DNA of 64,000 nt, from NCBI RefSeq assembly GCF_022045235.1, contig NW_027266300.1:1364001-1428000 (forward strand), given 5' to 3'. Both the position numbers and the translations under genes were made by a program. Shown in pieces: positions 3,039 to 56,371 of the stretch; the stretch's first letter is position 1; every line of letters begins with the position of its first letter. The DNA is from Haliotis cracherodii. Taxonomy: Eukaryota. Under the pieces are notes generated by a model. The model was not told the DNA's origin, did not search any database, and was given only the letters and a program-made list of their open reading frames with translations.

Positions 3039-3440
3039 TTGACAGTCAGGAGTAAGGTGACAGTCAGGAGTAAGGTGACAGTCAAGAGTAAGGTGACAGT
3101 CAGGAGTAAGGTGACAGTCAAGAGTAAGGTGACAGTCAAGAGTAAGGTGACAGTCAAGAGTAAGGTGACAGTCAAGAGTAAGGTGACAGTCAGGAGTAAG
3201 GTGACAGTCAGGAGTAAGGTGACAGTCAGGAGTAAGGTGACAGTCAAGAGTAAGGTGACAGTCAAGAGTAAGGTGACAGTCAGGAGTAAGGTGACAGTCA
3301 GGAGTAAGGTGACAGTCAGGAGTAAGGTGACAGTCAAGAGTAAGGTGACAGTCAGGAGTAAGGTGACAGTCAGGAGTAAGGTGACAGTCAGGAGTAAGGT
3401 GACAGTCAGGAGTAAGGTGACAGTCAGGAGTAAGGTGACA
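3039..3440. repeat. 18-bp minisatellite GTGACAGTCA(G/A)GAGTAAG, ~22 units, intronic
   Basis: Near-perfect tandem copies. Confidence 0.97.
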
Positions 3441-8171: not shown

Positions 8172-11100
8172 CGGATAGGTGATCTCTTGCAGTAATAGAT
8201 GTTAACTGAGAGTGGGTGATCTCCTGCTGTAATGGATGTTTAATGAGGGTGGGTGATCTCCTGCTGTAATGGATGTTTACTAAGAGTGGGGGATCTCCTG
8301 CTGTGATAGATGTCTACAGAGAATGGGTGATCTCCTGCTGTAATAGATGTCAAATGAGAGTTGGTGACCTCCTGCTGTAATAGATGTCAAATGAGAGTGG
8401 GGTATCTCCTGCCGTAATAGATGTCTACAGAGTGGGTGATCTCCTGTAATAGATGTCTACTGAGGGTGGGTGATCTCCTGCTGTAATAGAAGTCAAATGA
8501 GAGTGGGTGATCTCCTGCTGTAGTAGATGTCTACCGTGAGTGAGTGATCTCCTGCCGTAATAGATGTCTACTGAGAGTGGGTGATCTCCTGCTTTAATAG
8601 ATGTCTACTGAGGGTGGGTGATCTCCTGCTGCAATAGATGTGTACTCAGAGTTGGTGATCTCCTGCTGTAATAGATGTCTACTGAGAGTGGGTGATCTCC
8701 TCCTGTAATAGATGTCTACTGAGAGTGGGTGATCTCCTCCTGTAATAGATGTCTTCTGAGAGTGGGTGATCTCCTGCAGTGATAGATGTCAAATGAGAGT
8801 GGGTGACCTCCTGCTGTAATAGATGTCAAATGAGAGTGGGGTATCTCCTGCCGTAATAGATGTCTACAGAGTGTGTGATCTCCTCCTGTAATAGATGTCT
8901 ACTGAGGGTGGGTGATCTCCTGCTGTAATAGAAGTCAAATGAGAGTGGGTGATCTCCTGCTGTAGTAGATGTCTACCGTGAGTGAGTGATCTCCTGCTGT
9001 AATAGATGTCTACTGAGAGTTGGTGATCTCCTGCTGTAATAGATGTCTACTGAGAGTGGGTGATCTCCTCCTGTAATAGATGTCTACTGAGAGTGGGTGA
9101 TCTCCTGCTGTAATAGATGTCAAATGAGTGTGGATGACCTCCTGCTGCTATAGATGTCAAATGAGAGTGGGGTATCTCCTGCCGTAATAGATGTCTACAG
9201 AGTGGGTGATCTCCTCCTGTAATAGATGTCTACTGAGGGTGGGTGATCTCCTGCTGTAATAGAAGTCAAATGAGAGTGGGTGATCTCCTGCTTTAATAGA
9301 TGTCTACTGAGGGTGGGTGATCTCCTGCTGCAATAGATGTGTACTCAGAGTTGGTGATCTCCTGCTGTAATAGATGTCTACTGAGAGTGGGTGATCTCCT
9401 CCTGTAATAGATGTCTACTGAGAGTGGGTGATCTCCTCCTGTAATAGATGTCTACTGAGAGTGGGTGATCTCCTCCTGTAATAGATGTCTTCTGAGAGTG
9501 GGGTATCTCCTGCCGTAATAGATGTCTACAGAGTGGGTGATCTCCTCCTGTAATAGATGTCTACTGAGGGTGGGTGATCTCCTGCTGTAATAGAAGTCAA
9601 ATGAGAGTGGGTGATCTCCTGCTTTAATAGATGTCTACTGAGGGTGGGTGATCTCCTGCTGCAATAGATGTGTACTGAGAGTGGGTGATCTCCTCCTGTA
9701 ATAGATGTCTACTGAGAGTGGGTGATCTCCTCCTGTAATAGATGTCTTCTGAGAGTGGGTGATCTCCTCCTGTAATAGATGTCTTCTGAGAGTGGGTGAT
9801 CTCCTGCTGTAATAGATGTCAAATGAGAGTGGGTGACCTCCTGCTGTAATAGATGTCAAATGAGAGTGGGGTATCTCCTGCCGTAATAGATGTCTACAGA
9901 GTGGGTGATCTCCTCCTGTAATAGATGTCTACTGAGAGTGGGTGATCTCCTCCTGTAATAGAAGTCAAATGAGAGTGGGTGATCTCCTGCTGTAGTAGAT
10001 GTCTACCGTGAGTGAGTGATCTCCTGCCGTAATAGATGTCTACTGAGAGTGGGTGATCTCCTGCTGTAATAGATGTCTTCTGAGAGTGGGTGATCTCCTG
10101 CTGTAATAGATGTCAAATGAGAGTTGGTGATCTCCTGCTGTAGTAGATGTCTACTGTGAGTGAGTGATCTCCTGCTGTTATAGATGTCTACTGAGAGTTG
10201 GTGATCTATTGCTGTAATAGATGTCTACTGATAGTGGGAAATCTCCTGCTGTAAAAGATGCCTACTGAGAGTGGGTGATCTCCTGCTGTAATATATGTCT
10301 ACTGAGAGTGGGTGATTTCCTGCTTTAATAGATGTCTACTGAGGGTGGGTAATCTCCTGCTGCAAAAGATGTCTACAGAGAGTGGGTAATCGCCTGCTGT
10401 AAAAGATGTCTGCTGAGAGTGGGTGATCTCCTGCTGTGATAGTTGTCTACTGAGAGTGGGTGATCTCCTGCTGTAACATATATGTACTGAGAGTGGGCGA
10501 TCTCCTCCTGTAATAGATGTCTACTGGGAGTGGGTGATCTCCTGCAGTGATAGATGTCTGCTGAGAGTTAGTGATCTCCTGCTGTAACATATGTCTACTG
10601 AGAGTGGGTGATCTCCTGCTGTAATAGATGTCTGCTGAGAGTGGGTGATCTCCTCCTGTAATAGATGTCTACTGAGAGTGGGAGATCTCCTGCAGTGATA
10701 GATGTCTGCTGAGAGTGAGTGATCTCCTGCTGTAATAGATGTCTACTGAGAGTGGGAGATCACCTGCTGTGATAGATGTCTACTGAGAGTGGGTGATCTC
10801 CTGCTGTAATAGATGTCTACTGAGAGTGGGTGATCTCCTGCTTTGATAGATGTCTACTGAAAGTGGGTGATCTTCTGTTGTCATAGATGTCTACTGAGAG
10901 TGGGTGATCTCCTGCTGTGATAGTTGTCTACTGAGATTGGGTGATCTCCTGCTGTAATAGATGTGTACTGAGAGTGGGTGATCTCTTCCTGTAATAGATG
11001 TCTACTGAGAGTGGGTGATCTCCTGCCGAAATAGATGTTTGCTGAGAGTTAAAGAATTCCTGCTGTAATGGATGTGTACTGAGAGTGAGTGATCGTCTGC

Positions 11101-12278
11101 TGTAATGGAGGTTCACCCGGGACTTTGTAGCTCATGTTAAAATGGATGGATTCCCAGAGTGGATCAAGACTGCCTTCGTGGTCTAATGGTAGAGCGTCCA
11201 CCTGGAGAGCGGAAGGTCCGGGGTTCGATCCCCGACCGCATCATACCAAAAGACGTTAAAAGATGGTACTTGTTAGTACCCTGTCTGGCGCTCGGCATTA
11301 AGGGGCTAAAACAAGGACTGGTAGGCTCGGAGTCAGTATACTGTGTCTGAATGGGGTATTCATGTTAAACTGCGGCATGGTATCTCAGTGAGCTAGCACT
11401 ATAAATCGGCATCAGTCCGGACTAGTACAAGCAGACACACACATACACGTGCATGCACATCGCTATATAAGTGCACGTTAAACCATATTTCACCTCACCT
11501 CACCCAGTGTGGACCAGTGGGGGACTTTGGAGCGACCACGTGATCAGTCATAAACGTCGTCTCAGCGGTAACGGGTCTATTTTAAGTCCGCTTCAATAAA
11601 TCTTGTTGAAATTGGGCTAATGTTGAAGTTTATGTCTGGTGAAGATATCGACGGAATCAGAACGAATTCCAGTTGGAATTCAGGGGGCGTTATTTGTATG
11701 TAAATATATACACAATATATAGATGTCTACTGAGAGTGAGTGATCTCCTGCTGTAACATATGTCTACTGAGAGTGCGTGATCTCCTGCTGTAACCTATGT
11801 CTACTGAGAGTGGGTGATCTCCTGCTGTAAAATATGTCTACTGAGAGTGGGTGATCTCCTGCTGTAACATATGTCTACTGAGAGTGAGTGATCTCCTGCT
11901 GTAACCTATGTCTACTGAGAGTGGGTGATCTCCTGCTGTAACCTATGTCTACTGAGAGTGGGTGATCTCCTGCTGTAACCTATGTCTACTGAGAGTGAGT
12001 GATCTCCTGCTGTAACCTATGTCTACTGAGAGTGAGTGATCTCCTGCTGTAACCTATGTCTACTTAGAGTGGGTGATCTCCTGCTGTAACCTATGTCTAC
12101 TGAGAGTGGGTGATCTCCTGCTGTAACATATGTCTACTGAGAGTGGGTGATCTCCTGCTGTAACATATGTCTACTGAGAGTGGGTGATCTCCTGCTGTAA
12201 TAGTTGTCTACTGAGAGTGAGTGATCTCCTGCTGTATCATATGTCTACTGAGAGTGGATGATCTCCTGCTGTAATAGA
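8172..12278. repeat. 37-bp satellite array (GAGAGTGGGTGATCTCCTGCTGTAATAGATGTCTACT), interrupted at ~11110-11720
   Basis: Period 37 nt; the distal block 11720-12278 is a homogeneous TAAC(C/A)TAT variant; degenerate units already appear at ~7665-7715. Confidence 0.97.
11168..11503 (+). mobile_element. Full-length tRNA-derived SINE, family B (V-domain-like core)
   Basis: A box GTGGTCTAATGG, B box GGTTCGATCCC, core CATACCAAAAGACGTTAAAAGATGGTAC...GCATTAAGGG, (CACCT)n tail, imperfect TSD CCCAGAGTGGATCA/CCCAGTGTGGACCA; second copy at 36196-36512 (-). Confidence 0.85.
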
Positions 12279-13299: not shown

Positions 13300-13595
13300 G
13301 TGAGTGAGTGAGTGAGTTTGGTTTAACGCCGCTTTTAACAACTGTAATTTACAGTATTCCAGTCATATCCGGCGTGTCAGCTTAGTGTGGGAGAAAAGCC
13401 CGAAGTGATGCAGGTCTCAGACATTTATCACTTCGGTGAAACCAACGAGCACGGGTATGGTGCTGACAAACCTAGAAACATAATCGGGGCGAACCGGGAT
13501 TCGAACCCACAATCATAGGTTTCTGGCGTGCCTAAGGGGCACAACTCTGCACAGCGAATCGCTGTGCCTTAGACGACTGTGCCACCCGTGCCCCC
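13300..13595 (-). mobile_element. Full-length tRNA-derived SINE, family C
   Basis: Perfect 11-bp TSD GACAGTTTTGA (13289-13299/13596-13606); B box GGTTCGAATCCC; (ACTC)n tail; related copies at 25087-25342 (+), 54880-54996 (-), 58230-58365 (-). Confidence 0.88.
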
Positions 13596-14419
13596 GACAG
13601 TTTTGAAGTGTGAGTAACTGTGATGTAGGTCAAGTTCTGCCACATCGTTGTGGAGAGGTGTTTGTTTATTTTGATTTTTTTATTATTAACTGGGTTTGAT
13701 TGCTATCAAACTAATAAGACTTACACATGCAAACTATATAGTAGAATGTTTATTCATGAAGTTTATTGTAGAAATATATTCGTTATGCATTTTAAGAACT
13801 TCCACAACCTGTCACCCCTACAATGAAAATGGCATGTTCTATTTTAGAAATGACTTCTCTGGGTGATTTCCAAGAAATAACTTGGTGAGTCCAAACAGTG
13901 CGCAGCAGGTTTGTTGAATTGAAATTAAAACACCTGTCTTTGGACTAAGTTTGGAGGGTTATTTGTCAACGTCTGTTTGACAAACGGAGTGTTTTGAACA
14001 CTTATTTTGAACTACTCAAGACTATGGTGTTTTTAATCCTGTACGTTAGTAATGACTGCTACCTATATTACTACCTATGACCACTTTTTGGAATGTTCTA
14101 AGATTGTGGACGTGTGTACCCTGTGTTGTTACACATTGCAAGAGAGCACCGTTTTCAAAGCGTTGTTGCCATCATGGTAGAATGGCGATAAACCTACTGT
14201 ATTTTGAAATTTGATGAACTCGCACTGTAGAGAAGATACCTCTTATTTATACACTTGAAACCTCGTGCTGAAGTGGTCAGTTCAAAATTAAACTAAGAGG
14301 TAACTACTCTACAGTGGGACTACATCAAATTTTAAAACACAGAAGGCTTAGCTCCTAAATCGACTCTGCGTTATGCAGATATTTCTATTGGATATAGAAA
14401 GGGTATTGTTGCTTTATTT

Positions 14420-15140
14420 CATATGGATTTCATAATAAAAACAACTTCCAAGATGAATTACTCAATGAGAAAACTCAAACATCTACTCAGAGCATGCTTT
14501 GAATACATATATGAGGTATGGGGTGGTTGCCAACGGACAACGTGGAATATTAGAAAATTACAATTAGAAGCTGCACACATTGTAACTAGCCTACCTCAAT
14601 ATGCTCCAGGCAGCAGTTTTATTGAGAAACCGGGTGAGAACCCTTAGTTGAGCTTAGAAAGAAACATTAACTTTGTCTTTTCTTCAAAACAAATTCCTAT
14701 CTGTCAGATATTCTACTAAACACTGATGCTACTAAAACTCTTTAGAAACTCTGAAAACACCAGTGCTGTTCTTATTTTCCGTTATCAGACCAAAATTCTA
14801 CGATTTTCTGTTCTTTACAAAAGTACCCCCTACGTCACCCACGTACTTGATAAACTACACTATAATATCTTACAGACAAAACTGCGGATACATGTGCAGT
14901 CAATCAAATTATGATTTATATGGAATTAGTATAAAAGAACACCCTACCTGTACGTGTTTATCTCATTAAATGAATATTGTTTAGTCACCAGTGTGTATTT
15001 ATGATTAACAGCCTTTAAAATATTGTTCATAACATACATGGTGGTGTGAATCTTTTGTTACACGGCATAACATGTCACGTTTTTACAGATAATGATAATG
15101 AGATAATATATGTAAGACAGCCTAACATTATAAATGACAG
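14420..15140 (+). mobile_element. Decayed CR1-like LINE 3' portion
   Basis: FEYIYEVWGGC...KLQLEAAHIVTSLP resembles the post-RT EY..VW..C...LEKIQLEAARIVTG region. Confidence 0.55.
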
Positions 15141-15348
15141 ACTATAACATATGTGTAAAGAACTGTTCTCTGAACAATGCATCTTTCTCTCCTCTCTCTA
15201 TCTCACAGACACACTCAGTATTGCATGTATACAGACTGAATTAAATACCAGGGAGATGCAATCTAAAGTAACATGTCCTCCAGTACCTTTCGCTTCTTGT
15301 AAATCAATATATTCAAATCAGCGAGTGGAAAGCGTACGTATGACAAAT

Positions 15349-16686
15349 CTAGCATTTCCTCACTGGCTCCATGATAGCCGCAAAATAATGCTCAGAAGGG
15401 CACTTGATGAGCACACCTGAAATACTCCTCCTTTTCTTGAATACACTTCCTATATGTATCAGATGAGACAAGGTGTACGTTCTCCTTGGTATGCTTAGTC
15501 GGATAAAGTGCTGTTGCTTGGGATTCTCCCGTTCGTTGGTATCATCGACTTTCAAGACATCATGGAGATGTTTACATCGTATGCCACCTTCTACATACAG
15601 GGCACAGTGCAGGGCCCAAGCTGGATACTGTTCTGTGGGAATGTGGGGTAAACATTTGGCAGCGTTAATGTAGATGGCACTTCCTACTGGCTCTACTAAT
15701 GGGACGCCGGCCTTCTTCAAGATGTCTCCAAATGTGGTCAAGCTTTCAACTCTGTACTTCAGATACCTGTCATCCGTTCCTTCCCAGAGACCTCTAGCTA
15801 CAGCTTCCATATCCCGGCTAGATATCCCACCATGGTTGGAATTGCCTTCAATGTAGATCATTCGTCGTTTGAATTTTCCGTATATATCAGAGAGTCGAGT
15901 GGCGAAAAAGCCACCAATGTTACACAATCCATCCTTTTTAGCAGACATGTACATTCCATCAAAGTAGGAGAACATTTCCAGAGCTATATCTCTTGCGGGT
16001 ACATCTTGATACATCTTGTTTCGTGTTTTGATGAAATATGCATTTTCTGCAAAACGACATCCATCCATAAACAGAGGGGTATCATGCATCTTGCAGATTT
16101 CAGAAACATGTTTGATGTTTGCCATGGATACTGGCTGTCCTGCTTGATTGTTGCTGGTCAGGGTCAAGATGACAATAGCCTTGCCTGCATCCACCTCCCT
16201 GAGCTCTTCCTGCAACCGTGCACAGTCAAGATCTCCATTGAAGTATCCACCAGCAACTTGTTTGCAAGGAACATCTACCACTATCGCTCCACTGAGTTCA
16301 GCATTTTTACGCCCTGTGATATACATTGTGTTACTGAATACAGTGAGACCTGGCCTAGCTAGAACTGAGAAGAGAATATGTTCTGCTGCTCTGCCTTGGT
16401 GAACGGGAAGAATGTATGGAAATCCAGTTAAACGTTTGATGCTATCAACAAAAGCGTCAAAGCTCTCGGGATTGATGCAACCTTCGCTTGTATCCACCAT
16501 GGCAGCCCACTGGTGTTGGCTCATTGAAGCCATGCCGGAATCACTCCAAAGGTCAAAAGTTACATACTTGTCTTTGATCTGGAACGGATTGTAGCCGCTT
16601 TCATGTAGAATTTTCAATCGTTCTTCTCTGGTTGGATTCGGCAATGGTTCCACCATCTTAATGCGGAAGGGCTCAATGAATGACAT
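15349..16686 (-). CDS. tnaA: Tryptophanase/tyrosine phenol-lyase family PLP-dependent beta-eliminating lyase (TnaA-like), single coding exon, 445 aa
   Basis: Motifs EPFRIK, GYNPF, DLxxDSG, HQGRAAE, GQPVSMAN, DxxRFAENAYFIK, MSAKKDG (PLP Lys251), GG..RDMEA, PHIP..QYPA, RLSIPRRTYT; uninterrupted ORF; the symbol denotes family resemblance, not proven activity. Confidence 0.93.
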   Translation of the reverse strand: MSFIEPFRIKMVEPLPNPTREERLKILHESGYNPFQIKDKYVTFDLWSDSGMASMSQHQWAAMVDTSEGCINPESFDAFVDSIKRLTGFPYILPVHQGRAAEHILFSVLARPGLTVFSNTMYITGRKNAELSGAIVVDVPCKQVAGGYFNGDLDCARLQEELREVDAGKAIVILTLTSNNQAGQPVSMANIKHVSEICKMHDTPLFMDGCRFAENAYFIKTRNKMYQDVPARDIALEMFSYFDGMYMSAKKDGLCNIGGFFATRLSDIYGKFKRRMIYIEGNSNHGGISSRDMEAVARGLWEGTDDRYLKYRVESLTTFGDILKKAGVPLVEPVGSAIYINAAKCLPHIPTEQYPAWALHCALYVEGGIRCKHLHDVLKVDDTNERENPKQQHFIRLSIPRRTYTLSHLIHIGSVFKKRRSISGVLIKCPSEHYFAAIMEPVRKC

Positions 16687-16710
16687 TCTCTAAAATGAAA
16701 AGGTATTTGA
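16687..16710 (-). promoter_or_regulatory. Spliceosomal 3' acceptor directly upstream of the lyase ATG
   Basis: Minus strand reads tcaaataccttttcattttag|AGA ATG: polypyrimidine tract, TAG, and A at -3. Confidence 0.75.
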
Positions 16711-16738
16711 ATTTGAATTGAATTACATTAAAAACAAT

Positions 16739-19150
16739 TGAGTGAGTGAGTTAAAATTAAAGTCTCATCGGCAATATTTCAGCCATATCGTGACTATCAA
16801 GGGCTAAACATAATAAATTCATTTACACTATATAAACACCTGCGGACATAGGACAGTAAAATAACTAAACGTATCACAGAAAAAATAGGGTAGGCCTAAA
16901 TGTACTTTGAATGATGTGGAACTTCCTTAAACCCCCTTCAACAGTACAGACACTGAAATCTCATATTCTACTAATATTAAAACGACATTAAGATCTTTTA
17001 GAAAATCAAGTTCTTTCCAACAATTCAATTTCCTGTTAAAATCCAGTAATCAAGCGAGAAATATAACCATTAAAAAGATCCTTGGGAGATGATGATTTGA
17101 AATATTTATCCCTCGTCATGGCAAAATCAATAGTCAATCGCAACATGCTTGAGTGTGATTCTCTCATCAAAATGGAGGATCCCAACCTTTCAATAAGTAT
17201 TCATGTGTATATTTGCTATGGCCAATTCTACATGGTCATATTATGACCTCTTCAAATCTGGACAGACAACCTAAGCAAGTGTAACAGAAAGTTGGTTTTA
17301 TTTCATGTGATATCTTTATACATACTTGCGTGTCCCATTTCTTTTGCTTAGGAATTTTGATGTAACATCTAATTCTAATTCCAAAATTTCAAGTAAAAGT
17401 GGATGTTTTCATAGGAAATGTTCTTAATGGCCTGAAGACAGGGAATCGGGAAAAAGTATGAACTGTTTATGTTTAGATTGAGCATATATACATTTAAGAG
17501 CTGTAAACATTGCGTTTGATTCTTCTGTTAAAATTAAACTATATTTGGTAATCTTGATGACATAGTTGTCAGTCGCAAGTACATCACCATCTTTGTATTC
17601 ATCTAGAAATATAGATTTGTAAGTGCTATATGTGTTACGCAACTGATTATATTGTCGTAGGTAGATGAGTTACTTGTAGTTTCTTTCTGATTTCTTGACT
17701 TTAGTTAATGACAGGTCAACCAACTGTACCAACTGCAATGGTGAAGAAGACATGGTGGAGAGTTCTATTTTGAAGATTGATATTGGCAGCAGGAATGGAT
17801 GTTCTGATGGCTCCAAGGCAAAGATAGACACTGGATGTTGGTTATCAAAAACTTCATGTTGAACAAAATACTCTAACTAAATGGTCAACAATACTTCGAT
17901 TTTTCAGAAATCTGCACTGAATATTTGTAAATAAATTATTACATCTAAAGTTCCATATCAATCTATTGTTGACCATGCGTTCCGTGGTTTTGCAAACGAA
18001 TCTGGTCAAGGAAATAGATCTATAATTGGAAGGATCAGTGTGATCCCGTCAAGGTTTAGGTATGGGAACAACTATGGCATCACGTCATGAAGACAGAAAT
18101 TTTCCTGACGCCCAAATTTTATGAAATATTAATAGGTCTTCAAAAAAAATCAGGCTTTCTGTATAATGATTTCACTGGCCAATAAATATCCTTTATATTA
18201 CTACCAAACTGACATTATTTATATTATGAATATGGCTGTAGATAAACAGATCCCTTAGTTAAGTTAAGATATTAACCAGATCCTCAAAATCTGCATCAAA
18301 AGGCTCTGTCCGGTACACAACCCAGAACACCCAACTGATCCGTCATGGGGAAAAGGAATATCAACAAATCCGTATTGAATTAGGAAATTTGCACCTGTTG
18401 CACACGTGCGTATCATTGGAAATATGCCAGTCAAAATGACAACAAATCAAAAACCTTTTGTCTGAAAAAACATGAAAGCGAACGCTGTATTTTAGGGCAC
18501 ACAATTCCATGCCTCGGCGTTTTCAGGCATGTGTCAGAGCCCAAGGTGAACATAACCTCGGTGCTCCCAGCTTCGTTCTGAGCCTCTGTGACGTCATCCA
18601 CCGGCGTGTTCCTTACGGATTTTATTGTCAACATTTAATGTGATGGTTATGTTTGGTTCAGTTGGTTTTCTATCAATGAATTAGAATACACACCATCTGA
18701 ACATTGAATTGTTTTTTCAATGTCTTTTTTAATATATGTCATTTATTCAAGATTGTTTTTCAGATCTGTGCTGTTAGGAAGGTGAAGATTGAGACAATCT
18801 GTAGCTTGATTTGGTCAAGATGGAGGCGTACAGACGGTTTGTTTTTGTTGCCTTCGAAAATTGTTAATGTCCCCGTAAATTCTACAGTTAGGAGGTGTTC
18901 TACTTAGCAATGAAAACTCATAAGATGCAGAATAAGAATGTCCGATCAACAAGTGCCCACACCCGTGTAAATCAAGAGAAAGAAGAGGCCAACAATTGTA
19001 AACTATACCTCTTGACTCGAGTTTATTTGGAGATTCTAATCTTGATGTTATCTTGACTATCAAAATCAACCAATTCCGTTAAATTGGCTTGGTAGAAATA
19101 GCTTTGATATATCCTAAAGCCCAAACCCCTGCTCCTACTTCCTTAATATT
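16739..19150 (-). mobile_element. Decayed I/Nimb-like LINE remnants, including a 3' end with (ACTC)n tail
   Basis: Minus strand ~17235-17110 reads CRIGHSKYTHEYLLKG..PP...TLKH; 3' tail GCTGAAATATTGCCGATGAGACTTTAA..(ACTC)n at 16739-16795; weak RT-like remnants near 18.9-19.15 kb. Confidence 0.55.
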
Positions 19151-19317
19151 AAGATTTGAGAGGTGAAAGAAGAATATCCCATTCAATTCAACTGTGTCGT
19201 GTTGACCAGATATAAACGTCTGTACCCTTGACCATTATTCATTTCTTTTTGCGGTACTTAGTATTGTATTACTGACCAGAGATTGGGAATAGTCAGTATG
19301 GTGGAAATGTATTTCAA

Positions 19318-20597
19318 ACAAGAGACGTGCTAAACAATTTAAAAAATACTGCTGATACAAAAGTGATTAATGTAACAAAAATGTAACACATTATTGATGC
19401 TTACGTTGTGCGTCAAAATGAGATTTTAGCTTCAGAGAACTGTAAACTTGTCCACGTGGTATATTGAGGTCCTGAGATATTCTGAAACACGTTCATACAA
19501 ACAAATGAGAAGCCATTAGAGTACCACTCTAGCTGTATATATGTCCAAATACTCAAACATGCTTTTGGTCACTATTCACAACCGGTTCTTCATATCCAAT
19601 CGATTAAACATTTTGATTCAGCGCAGGAGGACAAATGCAAAATTCGTCCTCTTCAAATGATTAATCGATTAGAGTATTTCTCTGTAATCTGTCTGTCCGT
19701 ATACAAGAGTAGTTATTGTTCTATCAAAACAATACCATTGATTTGGGATTCGGAATTTTGTATTTCTGTCAAGTACACACCAATATGAACAGTCAAAATC
19801 AAATTTGTTGCCATGGAAACAGAATTTGTTTTCTATACACACCGTAGTAGCAAAAGGCAAACTGGTGTGTGCAAAGTGTCATGAAAGAATACCTATCAGT
19901 TTTAGAGATATAGTCTGGACAAACACACCACTATGAACAGAGTCCAAGTCAAACTTGTTGCCATGGAAAATAATTCCTAAATAACAAAAAAACACCACTT
20001 CAGTACTTGGTTAATACATGTACCAGGTTAGGATGAAAAGTCTTTCACAGTTTTCAAGTTGTGCACCTACCCCTACATTCTTAGACTAAGTCCAAATTGT
20101 TTCCATGGAAATCAAGAAAAAATAAAAATGCCAATAATCCGCAAATAACAAAAGCTACCACAACAGGATCTGTGTGATATATCTGCCAAGTTTTGTAGAA
20201 AAATACAGAACGGTTTTCGAGTTACGCTCAAGAAACCAAAAACAAGTCGCGCAAAATTATCCGTGAAACCAGCAATCGTGTCCGTGTCCAACTTCTTTCC
20301 ATAAAGATTTTTAAAAGATTTGTTTTTTGAAATTTCAAAATAGCAAAAGGTACCACTTCAGCGTGGAATGATTCGATCAAATATACTGAATGGTTTTTGA
20401 ATTCTGCCCTGGAAACGAACCCCATCTCCAATGGAGTCTATGTCCAACTTCTTTCCATAACAATTTAAAAAAAAATATCAAAAAATCCCAAAATATCAAA
20501 AGGCACCACTTCACTATGTGACTGATAGATTTGACAAGTTTCGATCAAATACACTGAATGGTTTTCGAGTTCTGCCTCGGAAAAGGAAATGATTGCG

Positions 20598-41340: not shown

Positions 41341-43040
41341 AGTTATTTTCCCTTTAGTTATAGTTTTTTGGGTATGGTGATTTATGTATATTTCTTATTA
41401 TATTCTTATTCATAATTCCCAACCTACATCCCATCTCCGAAATACATTAACTGTGAAGAAGACTCCCAAAACTCCGCTCATTAAGTAAGAGAAAGCAGAG
41501 AAGTATGGCGGGGGGGGGGGGGGGGGGGAGAGGGAAACCTTAAAATCACAAATGCCAATGTTGAGTTCATCTGCTCTCCGATTGTTGTTACACAAGTGGT
41601 AAAATGGTATCCTCCCATCAATCATACAGGCCATTTGTCATACAGCTTAAAACAACATAGGTTATGCATGACTGGACCACTAACCCCCTGCCTTCTACCT
41701 ATCAATATGGACTGTTCCACACAGATCATTAACTTTGTTTATGTTTAAGTTTGTATTATAGGGAACACCAGGATTATAAATATGAATGATCTTGTGCTAA
41801 TTCATTTGCAGATTGTAAGAAAACAAATTGTAAAGAAGAAAAGTAATAAATAAATTAGTATGGTTTATTCAACATAATATTATAAATATGAACCATGTTT
41901 AACAAGAATTAATTACATAATTCAACATTCAAAGCATCATAATGGAGGATAATGGCTATCCAAGCTTCAATAGGTGACCTGCAGCATCAAGGAACTGGAT
42001 CAGACTTTTCCTTCCTTGGGTCAGCTGATCTTTCAGTCTCTGGAGTCTATTGTCAACCTCACGGTAGACCCGCTTTCTACTTGGTTCAGGTGCACGGAGG
42101 TTGATCTGCATCAACTGGATGGCACAGATTGCTGCTTGTTCAAAATCTGTCTGAAGGGGAGTGGTGGCAAGTTCTCTGTTCAGGGTGTCTGCAAACATTG
42201 GTCTTCAAAAGGCTGAACAGTCTTCTGTACGTTGGCATCTGGTGGTCGGGTAGCAAAGCATAAACTACAGGATAGCTAGCAGATCCACTTCTGATGTGAA
42301 GTATGTACACTTGATCCCAAAGGGCAGGGCAGGTGGTAAAGGTACAATCCATGTATGTCGTCTCAGCACCTTGTAGGATCTGTAGCTGCTCATCTGTGGC
42401 AAAGGCAAGGACCTTATTTTCTTCTCCATCGCTATATAGGAGGAAGCGGCCCCCATCTGATGTATGGCTCCAGGCATCATCTAGGTCCACGTGGGCTCTG
42501 GTTTAGGGCAGGACGGGTATGGTCTTCCTTCTGTGGTGGTAAAGGGCACTGCTAATGCTGGGGAAGGCAGGGAGGGCTTGGGCCTGGTCATCATCTTCAT
42601 CAGCGATCTGTTGGTTGTAGAGCAGCTGTATCGGGGTTGTTTCCTCTTTTGCTCTTCCTCAAGTTGCTGACAAAATGAACTAGGTTTGAATTCTCTGGGG
42701 TGGTTGTGCTCTGACACATTCCTCACAAAATACCAACAGTAGTGCACTTGCTGGAGCAGGATTTAATTACACGACGCCAGTGTTGTGCTGTCTGTCTTGT
42801 TGCATTCTTGTTAAACAAGTATCCTTCAAAGAGAACCTGCTGGGTACCGCGGGCTGACGTAACATATTCTACAAGTCGCAGAGCCATGATTGTGAATGAT
42901 GACTGACTGATTTATAGATTTTTACGTCCGCTTCGCATTTATTGCATTTCGAGGATGGGGTAGGTGGGGAAATAAAGATGAATAGATTAAATATGAAAAT
43001 CACCATGCCCAAAAAACTGTAACTAGCCGGGGGATGATCT
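41341..43040 (-). mobile_element. Mutator-like (MULE) transposon with FLYWCH-MULE transposase pseudogene (~41956-42887)
   Basis: ~120-bp imperfect TIRs (TAGTTATAGTTTTTTGGGTATGGTGAT / ATCACCATGCCCAAAAAACTGTAACTA); motifs FEGYLF..W, HNHP, YMDCTFTTCP..QVYILH, PVVYALLP, TDFEQAAI. Confidence 0.85.
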
Positions 43041-43179
43041 AGATTGTACTAGTGATGATACTTCGAGAGTATTATTATGGGTGTTGTTATTAGGAGGGAG
43101 CGTTAAGGGCCTTTACTATATATTACAGGGGAACACTGAGGTAGGGGTATAGCATATTGGGTGATTGAAGATATGTAGT

Positions 43180-46100
43180 TAGGCCACATTATTTAAGTAA
43201 GGGGAATAGATAAATAAAGAAAAAAGGGTTAAATTTTAGAGCCGTATAAGCCGGTTGTCCCCTGGGGTGGGTGGTGGGTGGTGGTGTTGTGACGTGGGTT
43301 GGTGGCGAGCGGTGTGGGCTTGTTATTGGTTGGTGCCGGCTGGCTTAACGACTGTATTAAGTTAGTGTATGGATAACCAGGGTTATAGGCACGGACGTCG
43401 GAGAGGACGACTCGTGTTGGAAATTTTGATCCCGATCCGAAAGTTGTTTTTTTTGGTTTACTAGGGCATAGTTATGTTGTATAGATTTGTTTGGGAGGTT
43501 CTAAAATCAGTCTGTAAGGTCGGCTTTGATGATGAATTGGGTTATTGCGTTGAAGATGGGGATAGGGTTGGAAGGGTTGAAAAGTTGTGTGAGGTTTTGT
43601 TTATAGTTAGGAGGGATAGCGTGATAAAGTTCGGAGTGAAGGGCGCAATATAAAGGACAGCTGTTAAAAATATGATACAAGTCTTCTGGTTGATTACAAT
43701 ATGTACATTTCCCGTCCGGGTGCTGCCTTGTTTGTGTAAATTGTGGTTGAGGTTGGTATTTCCGCTAATGATTCTTGATATAATATTGTCCAAGTGGTTA
43801 GAGCTGTTAAAGTTGCGGCATTTGAGATTGTATTGCGTAAAAAGTGTTTTGAGCCATTGCGAGTTGGTGTTTTGGATTATATTGTTGTAGTTTTGGAGTT
43901 TTATAGACTTTTTAAATTTGTTTTTTAACTCTGCTTTGGAGGTGTGGAAATATATTTCTAATGAGGGCTGTTGGGTGGCTATTTTGGCTGCTATATGTGC
44001 TTTGTTATTGCCTGGTATATTGGTGTGTCCCGAGGCCCAGAGTAGACTGATTTGTTTGTTGTTATTGTTGAGTTGGGTGATGAGAGTAATAATGTTGTTG
44101 ATGAGGTCTGGGCGTGTTCTGGAGTATTTGTTTTGAATTTGTTTCTGTGCGGTTAGTGAGTCTGATATTATTAGAAATTTTTGTTGGTTAATTGTTTTGA
44201 TGGCATGAATTGATGTAAGGATGGCTAATAGTTCCCCTGTGTAATTGTTAGTGAAGTTTTTATAGTGAAAGTTTGTTCTGACGGGGGGTTGTTGGTCTAT
44301 GTGTATTCCTAGTCCTGTTTTCCCATTGTTTTGTGATGCGTCGGTGTAAATGTGGGTGTGTGTCGGCCAGTTGTTGTGGAGGTGTCTAAGGGTTGCTTCG
44401 GTCTTTTTTGCAGTTGGAGTACCGGGGCTTTGTATAAATAATTCGTGGAGCAGTGTGTCTACTGGGGGGGGGGGATGGGAGGTCGGCTATGTATTGGAGG
44501 GAGGGGTGTGTGTGTGTTATATTGCTTAGATTGTGGGTGTGTATTAGCTTGAGTAGGTGGGTCATGTATGGGGCTTGGTCAGGGGATTTATTGAATTTGA
44601 TTGCCGTTTGTTTGTTAATGTTGTTATATTTTTGTTTGAGTGTTTTAAAGATTGGATTGTGTTGTGCCCCAGCCCCAGTAGTTGAGGATTTTCTGTTGTA
44701 ATCTGTGTGTAATGGAGAGAGAGTTGGTCATGAGTAGTAAGGCATGGTGTGAGGTACCAGTCCTGGTGCCGGTGGCTATTTTGAGGGCCTTATATTGGAT
44801 TGATTTAATTTTGTTGTAGTTAGTAGTTGAAATGCCACTTGAGGCTGGAGCGGTGTAGTCGATTTTGGATTGAATAAGTGTTTTGTAGATGTTGAGGTGG
44901 GTTTGTTTGTCAGACCCCCAATCGTTCCCTTTCATAGCTCTCATTAGGTTTAAATCTTTTTCACAAGAGTTGACCAATTTTGATATATGGGGGCCCCATG
45001 TAAGATGTTGATCAAATGTAACTCCTAGGAACTTAGCTTCTTTTTGGTATGTAATTTCTTTGTCATTAAGGTGAAGTTTGGGTGTGTAATTTTGCATATA
45101 TTGTTTTTTGAAGAGGGCCAATGGTCTTTTTGGTGTTTGATTTGGAATCCCCAGTTGGAAGCCCAATTTTGGATATTGTTTAAAGCAGATTGCATTCTAG
45201 TTTTTAGTAAATAGATGGAGGCCGAGGAGGTCCAGAGGGAAACGTCATCTGCGAATTTTGCTGTGGTAATTTTTTCTTTATTTTTTAATCTGAGAAGATG
45301 TCATTTATCATAAAATTGCATAGAGTTGGCGATAAGATGCTTCCTTGTGGGGTGCCGTTTTCAATGGGGTGAGTGTCGGACAGGGTTTGATGGGATTTAA
45401 CAGTGATGTGTCTGTCGGTTAGGAAAGAGTGAATGAAGTTTAGTATTCTCCCATTGATATGATTGTTTTCAAGTTTTTTAAGAAGGCCGTTATGCCAAAC
45501 CATGTGGAAAGCTTTGCTGACATCTATAAAGATGTCCAGGGTGTATTGTTTCATTGATTGTCTGTCCTTAGGTCTTGTTCTAGGTGTAGGATGTGGTCTA
45601 ATGTTTGTCTGTTATTTGTGAAGCCCCTCTGGTCTGGGCTGATTAGTCTGTTTATGGAGATGTGATGCTTAAGTCTATTATTGATAATTGATTCAAGGAT
45701 TTTGCATGTGTGGGAGGTTAGGGATATGGGACGGAAGGAGTCGGGATCATTGGGGGGTTTGCCTGGCTTCAGGACTGGAATGATTTTTGCGTGTTTCCAT
45801 GTTTGTGGTGTTGTGCCTGTTGACCATATTTGGTTGTAGAGTTGTAGTAATAATTGTTGTATTTGAGGTGTGATTTTATTTAGTATCATGTAGCTTATGT
45901 TATCTAGTCCCGTGGCTGAGGCTGTGTTTTTGTTATGGAGTGCATGTAGAAGTTCATGTATATTGATGGTTTTATTGATGGAGAGATGGGCTAAGTCGTA
46001 GGTTCGTAGGGGTGGTGGTTTTTGATTTTGTCTTGGAAGGGGGGGGGGGGATAGTTGGCGGTGCTGCTGGTCTTGGCAAAGTGAATAGCTATATGATTGT

Positions 46101-49100: not shown

Positions 49101-49675
49101 AAATTCTTTGGGATCGGGTGTGGAGAAGATGGAAGTGGATAGGAGTGGGGAGGGGAGGTCCATGGGGGGCGAGTATGTAGTGTCCATGATTTGGGAGAGG
49201 GGGTTGGGAACGGTGGTGGGGGTAGGTGGATATATACAAGATAATGGGTGATATACAAACAATCAATCAATGAAATAATTTACAGTTGGATGAGAATTGA
49301 TGAGTATTTACAGTCTATTTACATGGTTTATGCATTGAAGTACAAACATTGCATTGGGGAACATAAAAGTGGGAGGATAAATATAAGTTTTGATGAAGTA
49401 GGGGAGATAAGGTAGCAACTTATCTATGCTTTGGTTCTTTGTATCGAGAGTCCGTGGGGTGGGCTTGGGGGTGAGGCATTCGGTTGCAGTGGCGGCCGGC
49501 CGGCTTACAATGAATGTCCGAATCCCAGTATTTGGGCTTGTGTGTTATGGTGACGTTCGAAATCCCAGTTGGCGATGGTGAGTGCTGTGATCTTGGATGT
49601 AACGATGTTTGAGGTGAGTTAATGACTGGAGATGGCCTAGGAGGGCTGTTTGGGTTCCCATGCCGGGGACATGAC
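43180..49675 (-). mobile_element. Near full-length decayed I/Nimb-clade LINE (ORF1 with CCHC knuckles; ORF2 APE-RT-RNase H)
   Basis: ORF1 QC...H...C, CPKCGSENH..EC, CVNCKSEGH...CP; ORF2 MSIIQWNCNGL, LQET, LLGDLNAHH, FRPISLTS, DVSKAF, GTPQGSILSP, FADD, IYTDAS, SDSL; many frameshifts; 5' boundary approximate. Confidence 0.92.
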
Positions 49676-52390: not shown

Positions 52391-53157
52391 AGAATGTCTG
52401 TATGAGTGAGTAGAAAGTCTGTATGAGGAGCAGACTGTCTATTTGAGTGCGGTAGTAGAATTTCTGTATGAGTGAGGAAGTAGAATGTCTGTATGAGTGA
52501 GTAGAATGTCTGTATGAGTGAGGAGGTAGAATGTCTGTATGAGTGAGGAGGTAGAATGTCTGTATGAGTGAGGAGGAATAAGAATGTCTGTATGAGTGAG
52601 GAAGTAGAATGTCTGTATGCGTGAATAGAGTCTGTATGAGTGAGGAAGTAGAATGTCTGTATGCGTGAGGAGTTAGAATGTCTGTATGAGAGAGTAGAAT
52701 GTCGGTATGAGTGAGTTAGCAGAATGTCTGTATGAGTGAGTAGAATGTCTGTATGAGTGAGTAGTAGAATGTCTGTATAAGTGAGGAAGTCGAATGTCTG
52801 AGTGAATAGAATGTCTGTATGAGTGTGTAGAATGTCTGTATGAGAGAGTAGAATGTCGGTATGAGTGAGGAGGAATAAGAATGTCTGTATGAGTGAGGAA
52901 GTAGAATGTCTGTATGCGTGAGTAGAATGTCGGTATGAGTGAGTTAGCAGAATATCGGTATGAGTGAGTAGAATGTCTGTATGAGTGAGTTAACAGACTG
53001 TCTGTATGAGTGAGTAGAATGTCTGTATGCGTGAGCAGGTAGAATGTCTGTATGAGTGAGTAGAATGTCTGTATGAGTGAGTTAGCAGACTGTCTGTATG
53101 AGTGAGGAAGTAGAATGTCTGTATGAGTGAGGAGGTAGAATGTCTGTATGAGTGAGT
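52391..53157. repeat. ~21-28-bp variable minisatellite AGAATGTCTGTATGAGTGAG(GA)(GT)
   Basis: Seen directly. Confidence 0.93.
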
Positions 53158-56263: not shown

Positions 56264-56371
56264 CTGCAACAAAGTTGTAAATTTTACAATAAATTGTATA
56301 TTCATAATACTTATCCTATCTCACACTAGGCATTTCTCATTCTTCTTTCAATCCTTAGTGGAAAGGTGCTT

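What the first reader, a model, noticed from the sequence alone, without database searches (positions are those of the whole stretch)
15370..16545. Lyase active site is remodelled: PLP machinery kept, catalytic Tyr and specificity residues lost
By-eye alignment to Citrobacter TPL/E. coli TnaA as remembered. Retained: Gln/Arg of HQGR, Asn179 of TSNN, Asp208/Arg211 (DGCR), Ser248/Lys250/Lys251 (SAKKD) and the carboxylate-binding Arg of RLSIPRR. Changed: GDEAYAGS becomes TSEGCINP, so the general-acid Tyr71 equivalent is Cys70 (TGC, 16477-16479). Also LLTDSG to LWSDSG, F(T/D)TTR to YITGR, (S/T)YGG to NHGG, GGHA to G-SA, E(R/I)G to HLH, and LR(F/H)F to EHYF. Established: this Tyr is needed for C-C cleavage of Tyr/Trp, whereas substrates with good leaving groups (e.g. 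S-substituted cysteines) depend less on it. Inference: probably not an indole- or phenol-producing enzyme but a new PLP lyase, perhaps acting on sulfur, halogenated or dietary algal amino acids. Automated annotation would miss this.
Basis: partly seen in the sequence, partly recalled or inferred. Interest (0 to 1): 0.8.

Follow-up and report, generated by a model that had tools for sequence, protein, structure and literature searches.

The report
Abalone lyase lacking its catalytic tyrosine
An abalone gene of bacterial origin keeps everything needed to hold vitamin B6 and an amino acid, but its orthologues in four abalone species have replaced the residues that let tryptophanase cut tryptophan, so it is probably a re-tooled enzyme whose substrate nobody has tested.

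Summary
Window 15349..16686 (-) is an intact, intronless 445-aa ORF of the tryptophanase/tyrosine phenol-lyase subfamily, in a Haliotis cracherodii-like genome.

**What changed.** HMMER and MAFFT alignments put Cys70 (TGC, 16477-16479) under the general-acid Tyr. All 229 nearest non-Haliotis homologues, mostly bacterial or unnamed metagenomic, have Tyr there. The indole-recognition pair Asp-133/His-458 is Ile123/Tyr434, and about 20 other sites invariant or nearly so in those homologues are replaced.

**What was kept.** The PLP Lys, Asp, Asn and phosphate-loop residues, the cation-site residues and the carboxylate-binding Arg396 are all retained.

**Not decay.**
- The Cys and the new pocket are identical in 7 full-length orthologues and co-orthologues of 3 species; a H. 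rubra fragment also has the Cys.
- dN/dS against the in-genome paralogue is 0.24 (p = 3e-7).
- The AlphaFold model is confident and matches TPL at TM 0.91.
- Transcript-like contigs cover only the gene and stop exactly at an AG acceptor 3 nt before the ATG.

**Family context.** The gene belongs to an abalone family of at least 9 intact copies, with a single Tyr loss leading to one Cys clade and three Ser clades.

**Reading.** It is very likely not a Trp or Tyr lyase. A beta-eliminating lyase for heteroatom leaving groups is the best guess. This is untested, and E. coli Y74F data warn that activity and PLP affinity may be low.

The scan also noted this same stretch as s1-826210.

The parts
15349..16686 (-). 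Complete intronless CDS, 445 aa, TnaA/TPL-subfamily beta-eliminating lyase (Cys clade of the abalone family)
16477..16479 (-). Cys70 codon TGC, aligned to the general-acid Tyr (Proteus Tyr-72, E. coli Tyr74, TPL Tyr71)
   Evidence: Tyr in 229/229 nearest non-Haliotis homologues
16531..16551 (-). LWSDSGM (residues 46-52). Replaces LLTDSGT. Ser48 equals the carboxylate-binding Thr-50 and Ser50 equals Ser-52. L47W and T52M are at sites invariant in the 229 homologues; T48S keeps the hydroxyl at a site that is Thr in 227 of them
16390..16398 (-). QGR (97-99), the phosphate-binding loop and Arg-101 equivalent, retained
16309..16323 (-). YITGR (122-126). Replaces FDTTR: Phe-132 becomes Tyr, the indole-NH acceptor Asp-133 becomes Ile, Thr becomes Gly
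16147..16152 (-). Asn179 (equals Asn-194, which binds PLP O3' and the carboxylate) retained; the neighbouring Ser is now Asn
16054..16065 (-). DGCR (208-211). Asp208 equals the PLP-N1 Asp-223; Arg211 retained
15931..15945 (-). SAKKD (248-252). Ser248 equals Ser-263; Lys251 equals the Schiff-base Lys-266
15832..15843 (-). NSNH (282-285). His285 replaces the invariant Tyr of xYGG. I equate that Tyr with E. coli Tyr307, which bonds the neighbour's PLP phosphate; that equivalence is inferred from the motif, not aligned here. F/Y282 is now Asn
15679..15684 (-). G-S (335-336). GGHA is shortened by one residue and the His (TPL His343 by the alignment) is replaced by Ser
15559..15573 (-). KHLHD (372-376). 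Replaces VEIGS, or SMERG in TPL; there is no Arg381 equivalent. Model confidence here is only about 64
15481..15501 (-). RLSIPRR (396-402). Arg396 equals the alpha-carboxylate-binding Arg-414 and is retained
15382..15390 (-). HYF (433-435). Replaces RHF: His-458 (TPL Phe448) becomes Tyr434; Phe-459 (TPL Phe449) is kept as Phe435
15433..15434 (-). Site of a 12-nt in-frame deletion specific to this copy (VFK----KRR). The H. rufescens orthologue and the X1 and X18 contigs carry KNILGE here
16690..16700 (-). Splice acceptor tttcattttAG, ending 3 nt before the ATG. X1 and X2 contigs stop exactly at 16689, and the X2 contig continues for 187 nt that are unlike the window
14764..15348 (-). Probable 3' UTR: the extent of the X1 transcript-like contig beyond the stop codon
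   Evidence: table 8, record 6

Best explanation
**Origin.** The gene is a domesticated copy of a bacterial tryptophanase-type PLP enzyme. It belongs to a family that expanded in abalone.

**Order of changes.** The family first lost the indole-binding Asp/His pair. On one later branch it then lost the proton-donor Tyr, which became Ser in three clades and Cys in this one. The side-chain pocket was rebuilt with Trp47, Ile71, Asn72, Tyr122, Ile123, Gly125, Asn282, His285, Ser336, Lys372-His-Leu-His-Asp376, His433 and Tyr434. The PLP site, the cation site and the alpha-carboxylate clamp stayed intact.

**Proposed mechanism.** I infer that the protein still forms the external aldimine and the quinonoid, and performs alpha,beta-elimination (or beta-replacement) on an amino acid. 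The beta-substituent would leave without protonation at carbon, so it would be a thiol(ate), persulfide, selenol, oxygen ester or halide. The products would be pyruvate and ammonia. The small polar residue at position 70 would keep a hydrogen bond toward Arg99 and the neighbouring subunit's PLP phosphate, rather than acting as the acid.

**Shown:** the residue replacements, their fixation, purifying selection, the preserved fold, and probable transcription and splicing.

**Inferred:** that it binds PLP, that it is catalytically active, the reaction class and the substrate.
For: **Residue evidence.**
- Cys70 aligns under the Tyr in alignments to the Proteus TnaA sequence (1AX4), to a TPL (9J3U) and to the B. 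theta TnaA (8SBG).
- 229 of 229 nearest non-Haliotis homologues have Y70, F122 and D123, and 226 have H434. This shows a tryptophanase-type ancestor.
- All PLP, cation and carboxylate residues are kept.

**Fixation and selection.**
- The new pocket is invariant in 7 Cys-clade proteins of H. cracherodii, H. rufescens and H. asinina. The H. rubra fragment also has Cys.
- dN/dS is 0.24 against paralogue L002 (27 nonsynonymous and 29 synonymous differences, Fisher p = 3e-7) and 0.13-0.24 against the Ser clades.
- Against the rufescens-like contig X1 there are 9 synonymous and 11 nonsynonymous differences, roughly 0.3.
- The tree has the Tyr clades basal and one starred branch (SH-aLRT 99) to the Cys plus Ser clades. 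The codons TAC, TCT/TCC and TGC are one step apart.

**Fold.** AlphaFold2 gives pLDDT 86.8 and pTM 0.89. Foldseek gives TM 0.91 to TPL 6DVX.

**Transcription.** X1 and X2 contigs cover only 14764-16689 plus repeats, and end at the AG acceptor.

**Literature on Proteus TIL (PMC11301627).**
- D133A is dead on Trp but active on good leaving groups.
- H458A is 10-fold better than wild type on S-ethyl-Cys.
- Tyr-72* is the proton donor to C3.

**Precedent.** A TnaA-fold domain that is a C-S lyase exists: 9CEN thiocysteine lyase, TM 0.77.
Against: - No activity, PLP binding or substrate was tested.
- E. coli Y74F retains only about 0.4% activity on the good-leaving-group substrate SOPC and has poor PLP affinity (PMC2770544).
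- By my motif-based equivalence, the second phosphate-bonding Tyr (E. coli Tyr307) is also replaced here, by His285. The enzyme may therefore be weak or need other compensation.
- This particular copy carries a private 12-nt deletion in a C-terminal helix.
- It also has Met at the otherwise invariant Thr52.
- The family sheds copies: there are pseudogenes, and one clade lacks the PLP Lys.
- The RNA status of runs X1 and X2 is the tool's guess, and both contigs come from related species rather than this individual.
- Model confidence is low (53-64) over residues 371-390, which hold part of the new pocket.
Confidence: 0.55

Rival explanations
1. Pseudo-enzyme or strongly attenuated enzyme. The protein folds and may still bind PLP or an amino acid, but it no longer turns over substrate usefully. 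It would be kept for binding, sensing or scaffolding, for example as a partner of a Tyr-bearing paralogue in mixed dimers.
For: - E. coli Y74F is nearly inactive even on SOPC and loses PLP affinity.
- Both Tyr residues that I equate with the ones bonding the neighbour's PLP phosphate are replaced (C70, H285).
- A sister clade (L008, P0012) has lost the Schiff-base Lys yet keeps an open frame with omega about 0.22. Non-catalytic retention therefore does occur in this family.
- The active site is built across the dimer (Tyr-72* comes from the other chain).
- A reference listed in PMC11301627 has the title that hybrid dimers of H463F and Y74F E. coli TIL rescue activity (title only, paper not read).
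Against: - Every residue for PLP, cation and carboxylate binding is conserved, and the Schiff-base Lys is kept.
- The rebuilt pocket itself is invariant across species. That is expected for a site that still recognises a ligand.
- Omega of 0.24 is compatible with either reading.
Confidence: 0.2
2. Still a carbon-carbon lyase on an aromatic or heteroaromatic amino acid other than Trp or Tyr, such as a halogenated or hydroxylated algal amino acid. The Cys70 thiol would take over as the general acid.
For: - A thiol is a competent proton donor.
- Aromatic residues are kept or added in the pocket (Tyr122, Tyr434, Phe435, Trp47).
- The neighbouring A71I and G72N changes could move the loop toward the substrate.
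Against: - Sister clades with essentially the same framework carry Ser, a very poor acid.
- Cys is several angstroms shorter than Tyr, whose OH sits 3.9 A from C3 in Proteus TIL.
- The Asp/His (TIL) and Thr/Arg (TPL) residues that polarise the ring are all gone.
Confidence: 0.08
3. A recently duplicated copy drifting toward pseudogenisation. The active-site changes would be inherited baggage with no function of their own.
For: - A private 12-nt deletion.
- Several private nonsynonymous changes (A78, V313, S414 and others) against all four contig sets.
- Neighbouring family members L003, L009, L011 and L012 are broken.
- The copy lies apart from the main cluster among satellites.
Against: - An intact 445-codon frame.
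- Omega of 0.24, significantly below 1.
- Its terminal branch (0.016) is shorter than that of its H. rufescens orthologue (0.032).
- This copy keeps Arg396, which the annotated paralogue P0002 has lost.
- The orthologue appears to be transcribed.
Confidence: 0.07

Closest known systems
Tryptophan indole-lyase / tryptophanase TnaA (EC 4.1.99.1; Proteus vulgaris 1AX4, E. coli 2OQX)
   Same: - Same fold: Foldseek TM 0.91 to 1AX4 at 37% identity in the structural alignment, and TM 0.88 to 2OQX at 33%.
- HMMER E 2e-93 to 1AX4.
- Same PLP Lys, Asp, Asn, Ser and phosphate loop, the same carboxylate Arg and Thr/Ser, and Glu68, Gly51 and Asn256, which I equate from memory with the TPL K+ ligands.
- The nearest non-Haliotis homologues carry the TnaA signature FDTTR ... 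RHF.
   Different: - Tyr-72 is Cys, Asp-133 is Ile, His-458 is Tyr and Phe-132 is Tyr.
- The YGG Tyr is His, GGHA has lost its His, and VEIGS is KHLHD.
- It is encoded in an animal genome behind a splice acceptor.
Tyrosine phenol-lyase (EC 4.1.99.2; Citrobacter freundii 2EZ1/6DVX, 9J3U)
   Same: Best structural match (6DVX, TM 0.91). E 1e-92 to 9J3U. Same cofactor machinery.
   Different: - Tyr71 is Cys and Thr124 is Ile.
- There is no Arg381 equivalent.
- Phe448 is Tyr, and Met288 is Asn by the alignment.
Laboratory variants Y71F TPL (2YCN), Y74F TnaA (2V1P), and D133A/H458A Proteus TIL
   Same: They remove the same catalytic groups that nature removed here. D133A and H458A keep or improve activity on S-ethyl-Cys while losing Trp activity.
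   Different: - Here the replacements are Cys or Ser, not Phe.
- They are combined with about 20 further pocket changes.
- They are maintained by selection in several species.
- Y74F is nearly dead and binds PLP poorly.
Thiocysteine lyase SH domain of the guangnanmycin/leinamycin PKS (9CEN)
   Same: The only solved non-TnaA/TPL relative that was found (phmmer E 4e-18; TM 0.77). It is a beta-eliminating-lyase fold used for C-S cleavage, which shows the fold can be re-aimed at sulfur substrates.
   Different: Only 23% identity. It is a PKS-embedded bacterial domain. Residue-level correspondence at position 70 was not examined.
Haliotis 'tryptophanase-like' paralogues (e.g. XP_071080328, XP_071096805, XP_046335027)
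   Same: Same family, one origin (SH-aLRT 99). P0250 of H. rufescens is the orthologue of the window gene at 96% identity.
   Different: - Other clades carry Ser (three clades) or Tyr (two clades) at position 70.
- One Ser clade has lost the PLP Lys.
- The annotated in-genome paralogue P0002 has Gly at the carboxylate Arg.

Membership tests
Pfam PF01212 Beta_elim_lyase (fold-type I PLP enzymes) | Profile match above the gathering score | tested here: met
   190.5 bits against a cutoff of 27, residues 45-412
Pfam PF01212 Beta_elim_lyase (fold-type I PLP enzymes) | Schiff-base Lys, PLP-N1 Asp, O3' Asn and phosphate-binding Ser/Gln-Gly-Arg | tested here: met
   K251, D208, N179, S248 and Q97-G98-R99 align to Proteus Lys-266, Asp-223, Asn-194, Ser-263 and Arg-101
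Pfam PF01212 Beta_elim_lyase (fold-type I PLP enzymes) | Predicted fold superposes on solved members | tested here: met
   pLDDT 86.8, pTM 0.89; TM 0.91 to 6DVX and to 1AX4
NCBIfam NF009709 (PRK13238, tryptophanase subfamily) | Score above the curated cutoff | tested here: met
   456.8 against 285. Lower than bacterial P0042 (684) and P0122 (597)
Tryptophanase TnaA, EC 4.1.99.1 | General-acid Tyr from the partner subunit (Tyr-72 in Proteus, Tyr74 in E. coli) | tested here: not met
   Cys70; Tyr in 229/229 nearest non-Haliotis homologues
Tryptophanase TnaA, EC 4.1.99.1 | Asp-133/His-458 pair that binds the indole NH | tested here: not met
   Ile123 and Tyr434. Role of the pair from PMC11301627
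Tryptophanase TnaA, EC 4.1.99.1 | Equivalog HMM scores (TIGR02617, NF053783) | tested here: inconclusive
   335.6 against 825.8 and 373.9 against 750. A canonical-looking bacterial homologue (P0042) also fails, at 519 and 591, so these cutoffs do not discriminate
Tryptophanase TnaA, EC 4.1.99.1 | Indole release from L-Trp | not testable with these tools
   Needs an enzyme assay
Tyrosine phenol-lyase, EC 4.1.99.2 | Tyr71 general acid | tested here: not met
   Cys70 aligns to Tyr71 of 9J3U
Tyrosine phenol-lyase, EC 4.1.99.2 | Thr124 and Arg381, which bind the phenol OH; Phe448/Phe449 | tested here: not met
   Ile123; no Arg in 372-376; Tyr434/Phe435. Roles from PMC10170061 and PMC9262865
Animal gene acquired from bacteria | Sits in animal DNA, with nearest outside relatives bacterial and all animal copies forming one group | tested here: met
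   - The gene is flanked by abalone satellites and repeats.
- Orthologues lie on 54-102 Mb chromosomes of other Haliotis.
- Apart from four unnamed clusters of unknown origin, the next relatives are bacterial or metagenomic at 42-46%.
- All Haliotis copies sit on one side of a branch with SH-aLRT 99.
Animal gene acquired from bacteria | Eukaryotic transcript processing | tested here: inconclusive
   There is an AG acceptor at 16690-16691, and contigs X1 and X2 end at 16689. The X2 contig continues for 187 nt elsewhere. The runs are only guessed to be RNA and come from sister species

The most novel reading that the evidence does not exclude
After an animal captured a bacterial tryptophanase, the fold was re-invented for chemistry new to this family. 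Cys70 reaches across the dimer to where the substrate's gamma atom sits. There it would act as a catalytic thiol: as a sulfur or selenium acceptor, forming a persulfide as cysteine desulfurases do, or as the proton donor for a C-S, C-Se or C-halogen cleavage. The substrates would be seaweed-derived amino acids. The Ser, Cys and Tyr paralogue clades would form a diet-processing enzyme toolkit specific to abalone.
Probability: 0.12. Interest if true: 0.85.

Novelty: new variant of a known kind. Interest (0 to 1): 0.62.

Why it matters
The catalytic Tyr of tryptophanase and tyrosine phenol-lyase is present in every one of the 229 nearest non-Haliotis homologues sampled here. This gene is a natural lineage, kept by selection, that has replaced that Tyr together with the substrate-recognition residues, and it sits in an animal.

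It gives PLP enzymologists a ready-made set of clades for asking what the Tyr, Asp and His residues are really needed for. The set comprises Tyr, Ser and Cys clades and one clade without the Schiff-base Lys.

It gives evolutionary biologists a clear case of a gene of bacterial origin that expanded to at least 9 intact copies and diversified in an animal.

It also warns that the database label 'tryptophanase-like' should not be read as indole production in abalone. I found no paper on these genes. The 2021 survey of tnaA across life lists anemones, corals and octopuses but not Haliotis.

Tried and rejected
I could not fetch orthologue DNA from other Haliotis, so codon-model tests across species were not possible. 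I also could not see what organisms the unnamed sister clusters P0122, P0123, P0126 and P0127 come from.
- The protein-atlas search could not read P0126.
- A scan of 185,579 prokaryote species genomes for close relatives of P0126 found none. Their origin stays open.
- All four runs were contigs, so no strand, level or tissue information was available.

**Searches not run or empty**
- Three word-based searches had already ranked all close relatives.
- Literature searches for Haliotis or abalone with tryptophanase found nothing on these genes.
- The thiocysteine-lyase paper says nothing about a Tyr71 equivalent.

**Readings considered and rejected**
- Bacterial contamination. Rejected because the flanks are abalone repeats, DNA-run contigs cross them, ORF GC (0.45) is close to that of the flanks, and orthologues sit on chromosomes.
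- C37 as a haplotig of the C45 copy. Rejected because homology between L001 and L002 covers only about 1.6 kb (145 nt upstream to 110 nt downstream of the CDS), with dS 0.11.
- Other copies in the window. There are none.
- NCBIfam equivalog cutoffs as a membership test. These proved uninformative, because a canonical-looking bacterial homologue fails them too.
Full report
**1. What is at the coordinates**

The finding (15370-16545) lies inside a single open frame, 15349..16686 on the minus strand, 445 aa with an ATG start. This is the only ORF longer than 280 aa in the whole 64-kb window. The rest of the window is AT-rich and full of satellites.
- Pfam gives Beta_elim_lyase at E 5e-56.
- NCBIfam places it in the tryptophanase subfamily PRK13238, at 457 bits against a cutoff of 285.
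- The best solved relatives are Proteus vulgaris tryptophanase 1AX4 (2e-93) and tyrosine phenol-lyases (1e-92 to 1e-89).

**2. The organism**

The nearest proteins are all 'tryptophanase-like' entries of Haliotis. Two other copies in the window's own genome are letter-for-letter identical to H. cracherodii RefSeq proteins: L002 equals XP_071080328 and L006 equals P0006. The window is therefore black abalone or something extremely close to it. It is G000:C37:1364001-1428000.

**3. Check of the residue claims**

Retained:
- Gln97-Gly98-Arg99
- Asn179
- Asp208 and Arg211
- Ser248, Lys250 and Lys251
- Arg396 of RLSIPRR, which corresponds to Proteus Arg-414, the alpha-carboxylate ligand
- Glu68, Gly51 and Asn256, which I equate from memory with the potassium-site residues of TPL

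Replaced:
- L47W, T48S, T52M
- S69G, Y70C, A71I, G72N
- F122Y, D123I, T125G
- S180N, F282N, Y285H
- GGH becomes G-S
- V372K, E373H, I374L, G375H, S376D
- R433H, H434Y

I aligned 229 nearest non-Haliotis homologues, mostly bacterial or unnamed metagenomic. Among them Y70, A71, G72, F122, D123, Y285, G336 and G375 are invariant. E373 and R433 are 228/229, and H434 is 226/229.

**4. What the replaced residues do in the known enzymes**

In Proteus TIL the hydroxyl of Tyr-72, from the other chain of the catalytic dimer, lies 3.9 A from C3 of the substrate ring and delivers the proton as the C-C bond breaks. Asp-133 accepts the indole NH and is bridged to His-458. Phe-132 and Phe-459 pack on the ring (PMC11301627).
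- D133A is inactive on Trp but keeps activity on substrates with good leaving groups.
- H458A has 1.6% of kcat on Trp, but twice the kcat and ten times the kcat/Km on S-ethyl-L-cysteine.

In TPL, Tyr71 is the acid, while Arg381 and Thr124 hold the phenol OH (PMC10170061 and PMC9262865). All of these residues are gone here. Loss of Trp and Tyr C-C lyase activity is therefore a strong inference.

E. coli Y74F has 0.2 against 45.7 U/mg even on S-(o-nitrophenyl)-L-cysteine, and it needs millimolar PLP. This is because the hydroxyls of Tyr74 and Tyr307 bond the neighbouring subunit's PLP phosphate, and Tyr74 also bonds Arg103 (PMC2770544). By the motif, I equate Tyr307 with the YGG Tyr, which is His285 in this protein. 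That equivalence was not aligned here. Position 70 is always a small hydrogen-bonding residue (Cys or Ser) in the Tyr-less abalone clades and never a hydrophobic one. This fits retention of the bonding role and loss of the acid role, but that is my inference.

**5. Family context**

The window's genome holds at least nine intact copies plus fragments and broken copies. Most are clustered on contig C45, and one divergent copy lies on C5. A maximum-likelihood tree of 23 Haliotis and 52 other sequences puts all Haliotis copies on one side of a branch with SH-aLRT 99 (quick method). The order within is:
- first the C5 clade (Tyr; DESYKNS; at least 90% identical in four species);
- then a Tyr clade (L006, L007, P0007);
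- then a starred branch leading to the Cys clade and three Ser clades.

The codons are TAC (Tyr), TCT/TCC (Ser) and TGC (Cys), each one step apart. Even the Tyr-bearing clades have lost Asp-133 and His-458. The family therefore left tryptophan specificity before it lost the Tyr.

The closest outside sequences are four unnamed clusters: P0122, P0123, P0126 and P0127.
- They come from ENA contigs of 0.14-1.5 Mb and one Logan contig.
- They have fully canonical residues.
- They share several motifs with the abalone proteins.
- Together with the abalone proteins, they are split from the other 47 sequences by a branch with SH-aLRT 98.
- Their organisms could not be determined.

Beyond them, the relatives are bacterial or metagenomic tryptophanases. 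Those nearest the window protein are Chloroflexota and Bacteroidota at about 45%. Those nearest P0122 are Acidobacteriota at about 54%.

**6. Decay or function**

- The Cys clade has seven full-length members: two in this genome, four in H. rufescens and one in H. asinina. There is also a H. rubra fragment. All have Cys70. The seven full-length members also share Ile71, Asn72, Tyr122, Ile123, Gly125, Asn282, Ser336, His373, Leu374, His375, Asp376, His433, Tyr434 and Phe435.
- Against its in-genome paralogue L002 the window gene has dS 0.110 and dN 0.026, so omega is 0.24. Fisher p is 3e-7 for 27 nonsynonymous differences over 1041 sites against 29 synonymous differences over 285 sites.
- Against the Ser clades omega is 0.13-0.24.
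- The two copies share only about 1.6 kb of homology, so they are separate loci and not haplotypes.
- The H. rufescens protein P0250 is the orthologue of the window copy. It is 96% identical and pairs with it at SH-aLRT 99. The window's terminal branch is the shorter of the two.
- The window copy has a private 12-nt in-frame deletion (VFK----KRR, at 15433/15434). P0250 and the X1 and X18 contigs read KNILGE at that point.
- The window copy shares Met52 with the rufescens proteins P0250 and P0251.
- The window copy keeps Arg396. The annotated paralogue P0002 has Gly there.

**7. Fold**

AlphaFold2 with a 60-sequence alignment gives mean pLDDT 86.8 and pTM 0.89. Low confidence is confined to the N-terminus and residues 371-390. 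Foldseek returns TPL and TnaA structures at TM 0.88-0.91. Lower down, at TM 0.77, it returns the thiocysteine-lyase SH domain 9CEN, a C-S lyase built on this fold. Only a monomer could be modelled, so the distance from Cys70 to the partner's active site was not measured.

**8. Transcription and gene structure**

On the coding strand, directly upstream of the ATG, the sequence reads ttttcattttag|aga ATG. This is a pyrimidine tract followed by AG at 16691-16690.

Of the four public contig sets laid on 13500-19400, the two small ones (X1 and X2) were guessed by the tool to be RNA.
- Beyond 17440 they have almost no depth, and from 13500 to 14700 they cover mostly repeats.
- Within the gene they cover 14764-16689 (X1) and 15076-16689 (X2).
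- Both stop exactly at 16689.
- The X2 contig then runs on for 187 letters that do not lie anywhere in the laid stretch.

The large set X18 and the set X6 cover the flanks as DNA would. X1 is 98.5% identical to the window and carries the KNILGE letters, so it is the orthologue from a rufescens-like species. Its listed differences are 9 synonymous and 11 nonsynonymous, which gives omega of roughly 0.3.

I read this as probable transcription with a spliced 5' leader. This agrees with the scan's other note on this stretch (s1-826210). It is not proof for this copy in this species.

**9. Reading**

- **Best supported (0.55):** a PLP-dependent alpha,beta-eliminating (or beta-replacing) enzyme. Its substrate would carry a heteroatom leaving group, so that no carbon protonation is needed.
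- **Near certain (about 0.85):** it does not make indole or phenol.
- **Rivals:** a pseudo-enzyme or weak enzyme (0.2), a C-C lyase using the thiol as the acid (0.08), and a drifting duplicate (0.07).

The new pocket is rich in His, Lys and Asp (His285, Lys372, His373, His375, Asp376, His433). This hints at a polar or charged side chain. That is speculation, and no substrate can be named from sequence alone.

**10. Novelty**

The fold, the cofactor chemistry and the presence of tnaA-like genes in some marine animals are already known (PMC8537960). I found nothing in the searched literature on three things:
- the abalone family;
- its stepwise loss of the Trp-recognition pair and then of the catalytic Tyr;
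- the selected Cys and Ser variants.

I class this as a new variant of a known kind.

**11. Limits**

- The tree used the quick method.
- dN/dS rests on in-genome paralogues and on a partial list of contig differences.

Noticed in passing
L008 = G000:C45:836988-838235 (also P0012 and P0061 of H. rubra and H. rufescens): One Ser clade of the family has lost the Schiff-base Lys (SAKKD reads AAHMD, or AAH- in P0012). Asn179 is Asp and the QGR loop is altered. It still has an open 456-aa frame, with omega about 0.22 against its relatives. It is a candidate pseudo-enzyme.
   Followed up: partly
L002 = G000:C45:238722-240062 (XP_071080328): The annotated H. cracherodii paralogue of the window gene has Gly in place of the alpha-carboxylate-binding Arg (FIGLSIPRR). 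The window copy and all H. rufescens and H. asinina members keep Arg.
   Followed up: partly
L010 = G000:C5:35311728-35312957 (XP_071096805): A separate single copy that keeps the catalytic Tyr (DESYKNS). It is at least 90% identical in H. cracherodii, H. rufescens, H. rubra and H. asinina. It has also lost Asp-133 and His-458 and has Glu at the FDTTR Arg. It is the most conserved member and basal in the tree.
   Followed up: partly
P0122, P0123, P0126, P0127 (ENA and Logan contigs, 3 kb to 1.5 Mb): Four unnamed protein clusters with canonical tryptophanase residues are the closest outside relatives of the abalone family. They share motifs with it, such as YTISH, GEILK and an MEPFKIKMVEP start. 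No close relative exists in 185,579 prokaryote species genomes. They may come from other eukaryotes, but their source is unknown.
   Followed up: partly
G000:C45:62834-63892 (L003), 80742-82085 (L009), 104353-105102, 128042-128882, 147490-148741; C23:76072856-76073821: Broken or partial family copies, with stops and missing N-termini, lie among the intact genes of the C45 cluster and on C23. L003 is a 5'-truncated Cys-clade copy with one TAA stop.
   Followed up: no
window 8178-11106 and 11723-12274; also 3-849, 3040-3440, 52391-53157, 56371-56902: Large satellite arrays: a 37-bp unit with about 80 copies plus a further 15 copies, a 72-bp unit with 12 copies, an 18-bp unit with 22 copies, and others. 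The lyase gene sits alone among them.
   Followed up: no
window 42001-50000: An 8-kb stretch with very strong G-over-C skew (up to +0.62) and negative AT skew. It includes G-rich 35- and 72-bp repeats at 46326-46464 and two overlapping minus-strand ORFs at 47409-48601.
   Followed up: no
window 16739-16794 and 13500-13600: Very high-copy repeats, with contig depth hundreds to thousands of times that of the neighbouring sequence in all four runs. One lies about 50 nt upstream of the gene's splice acceptor, next to a (GTGA)n-like run.
   Followed up: no
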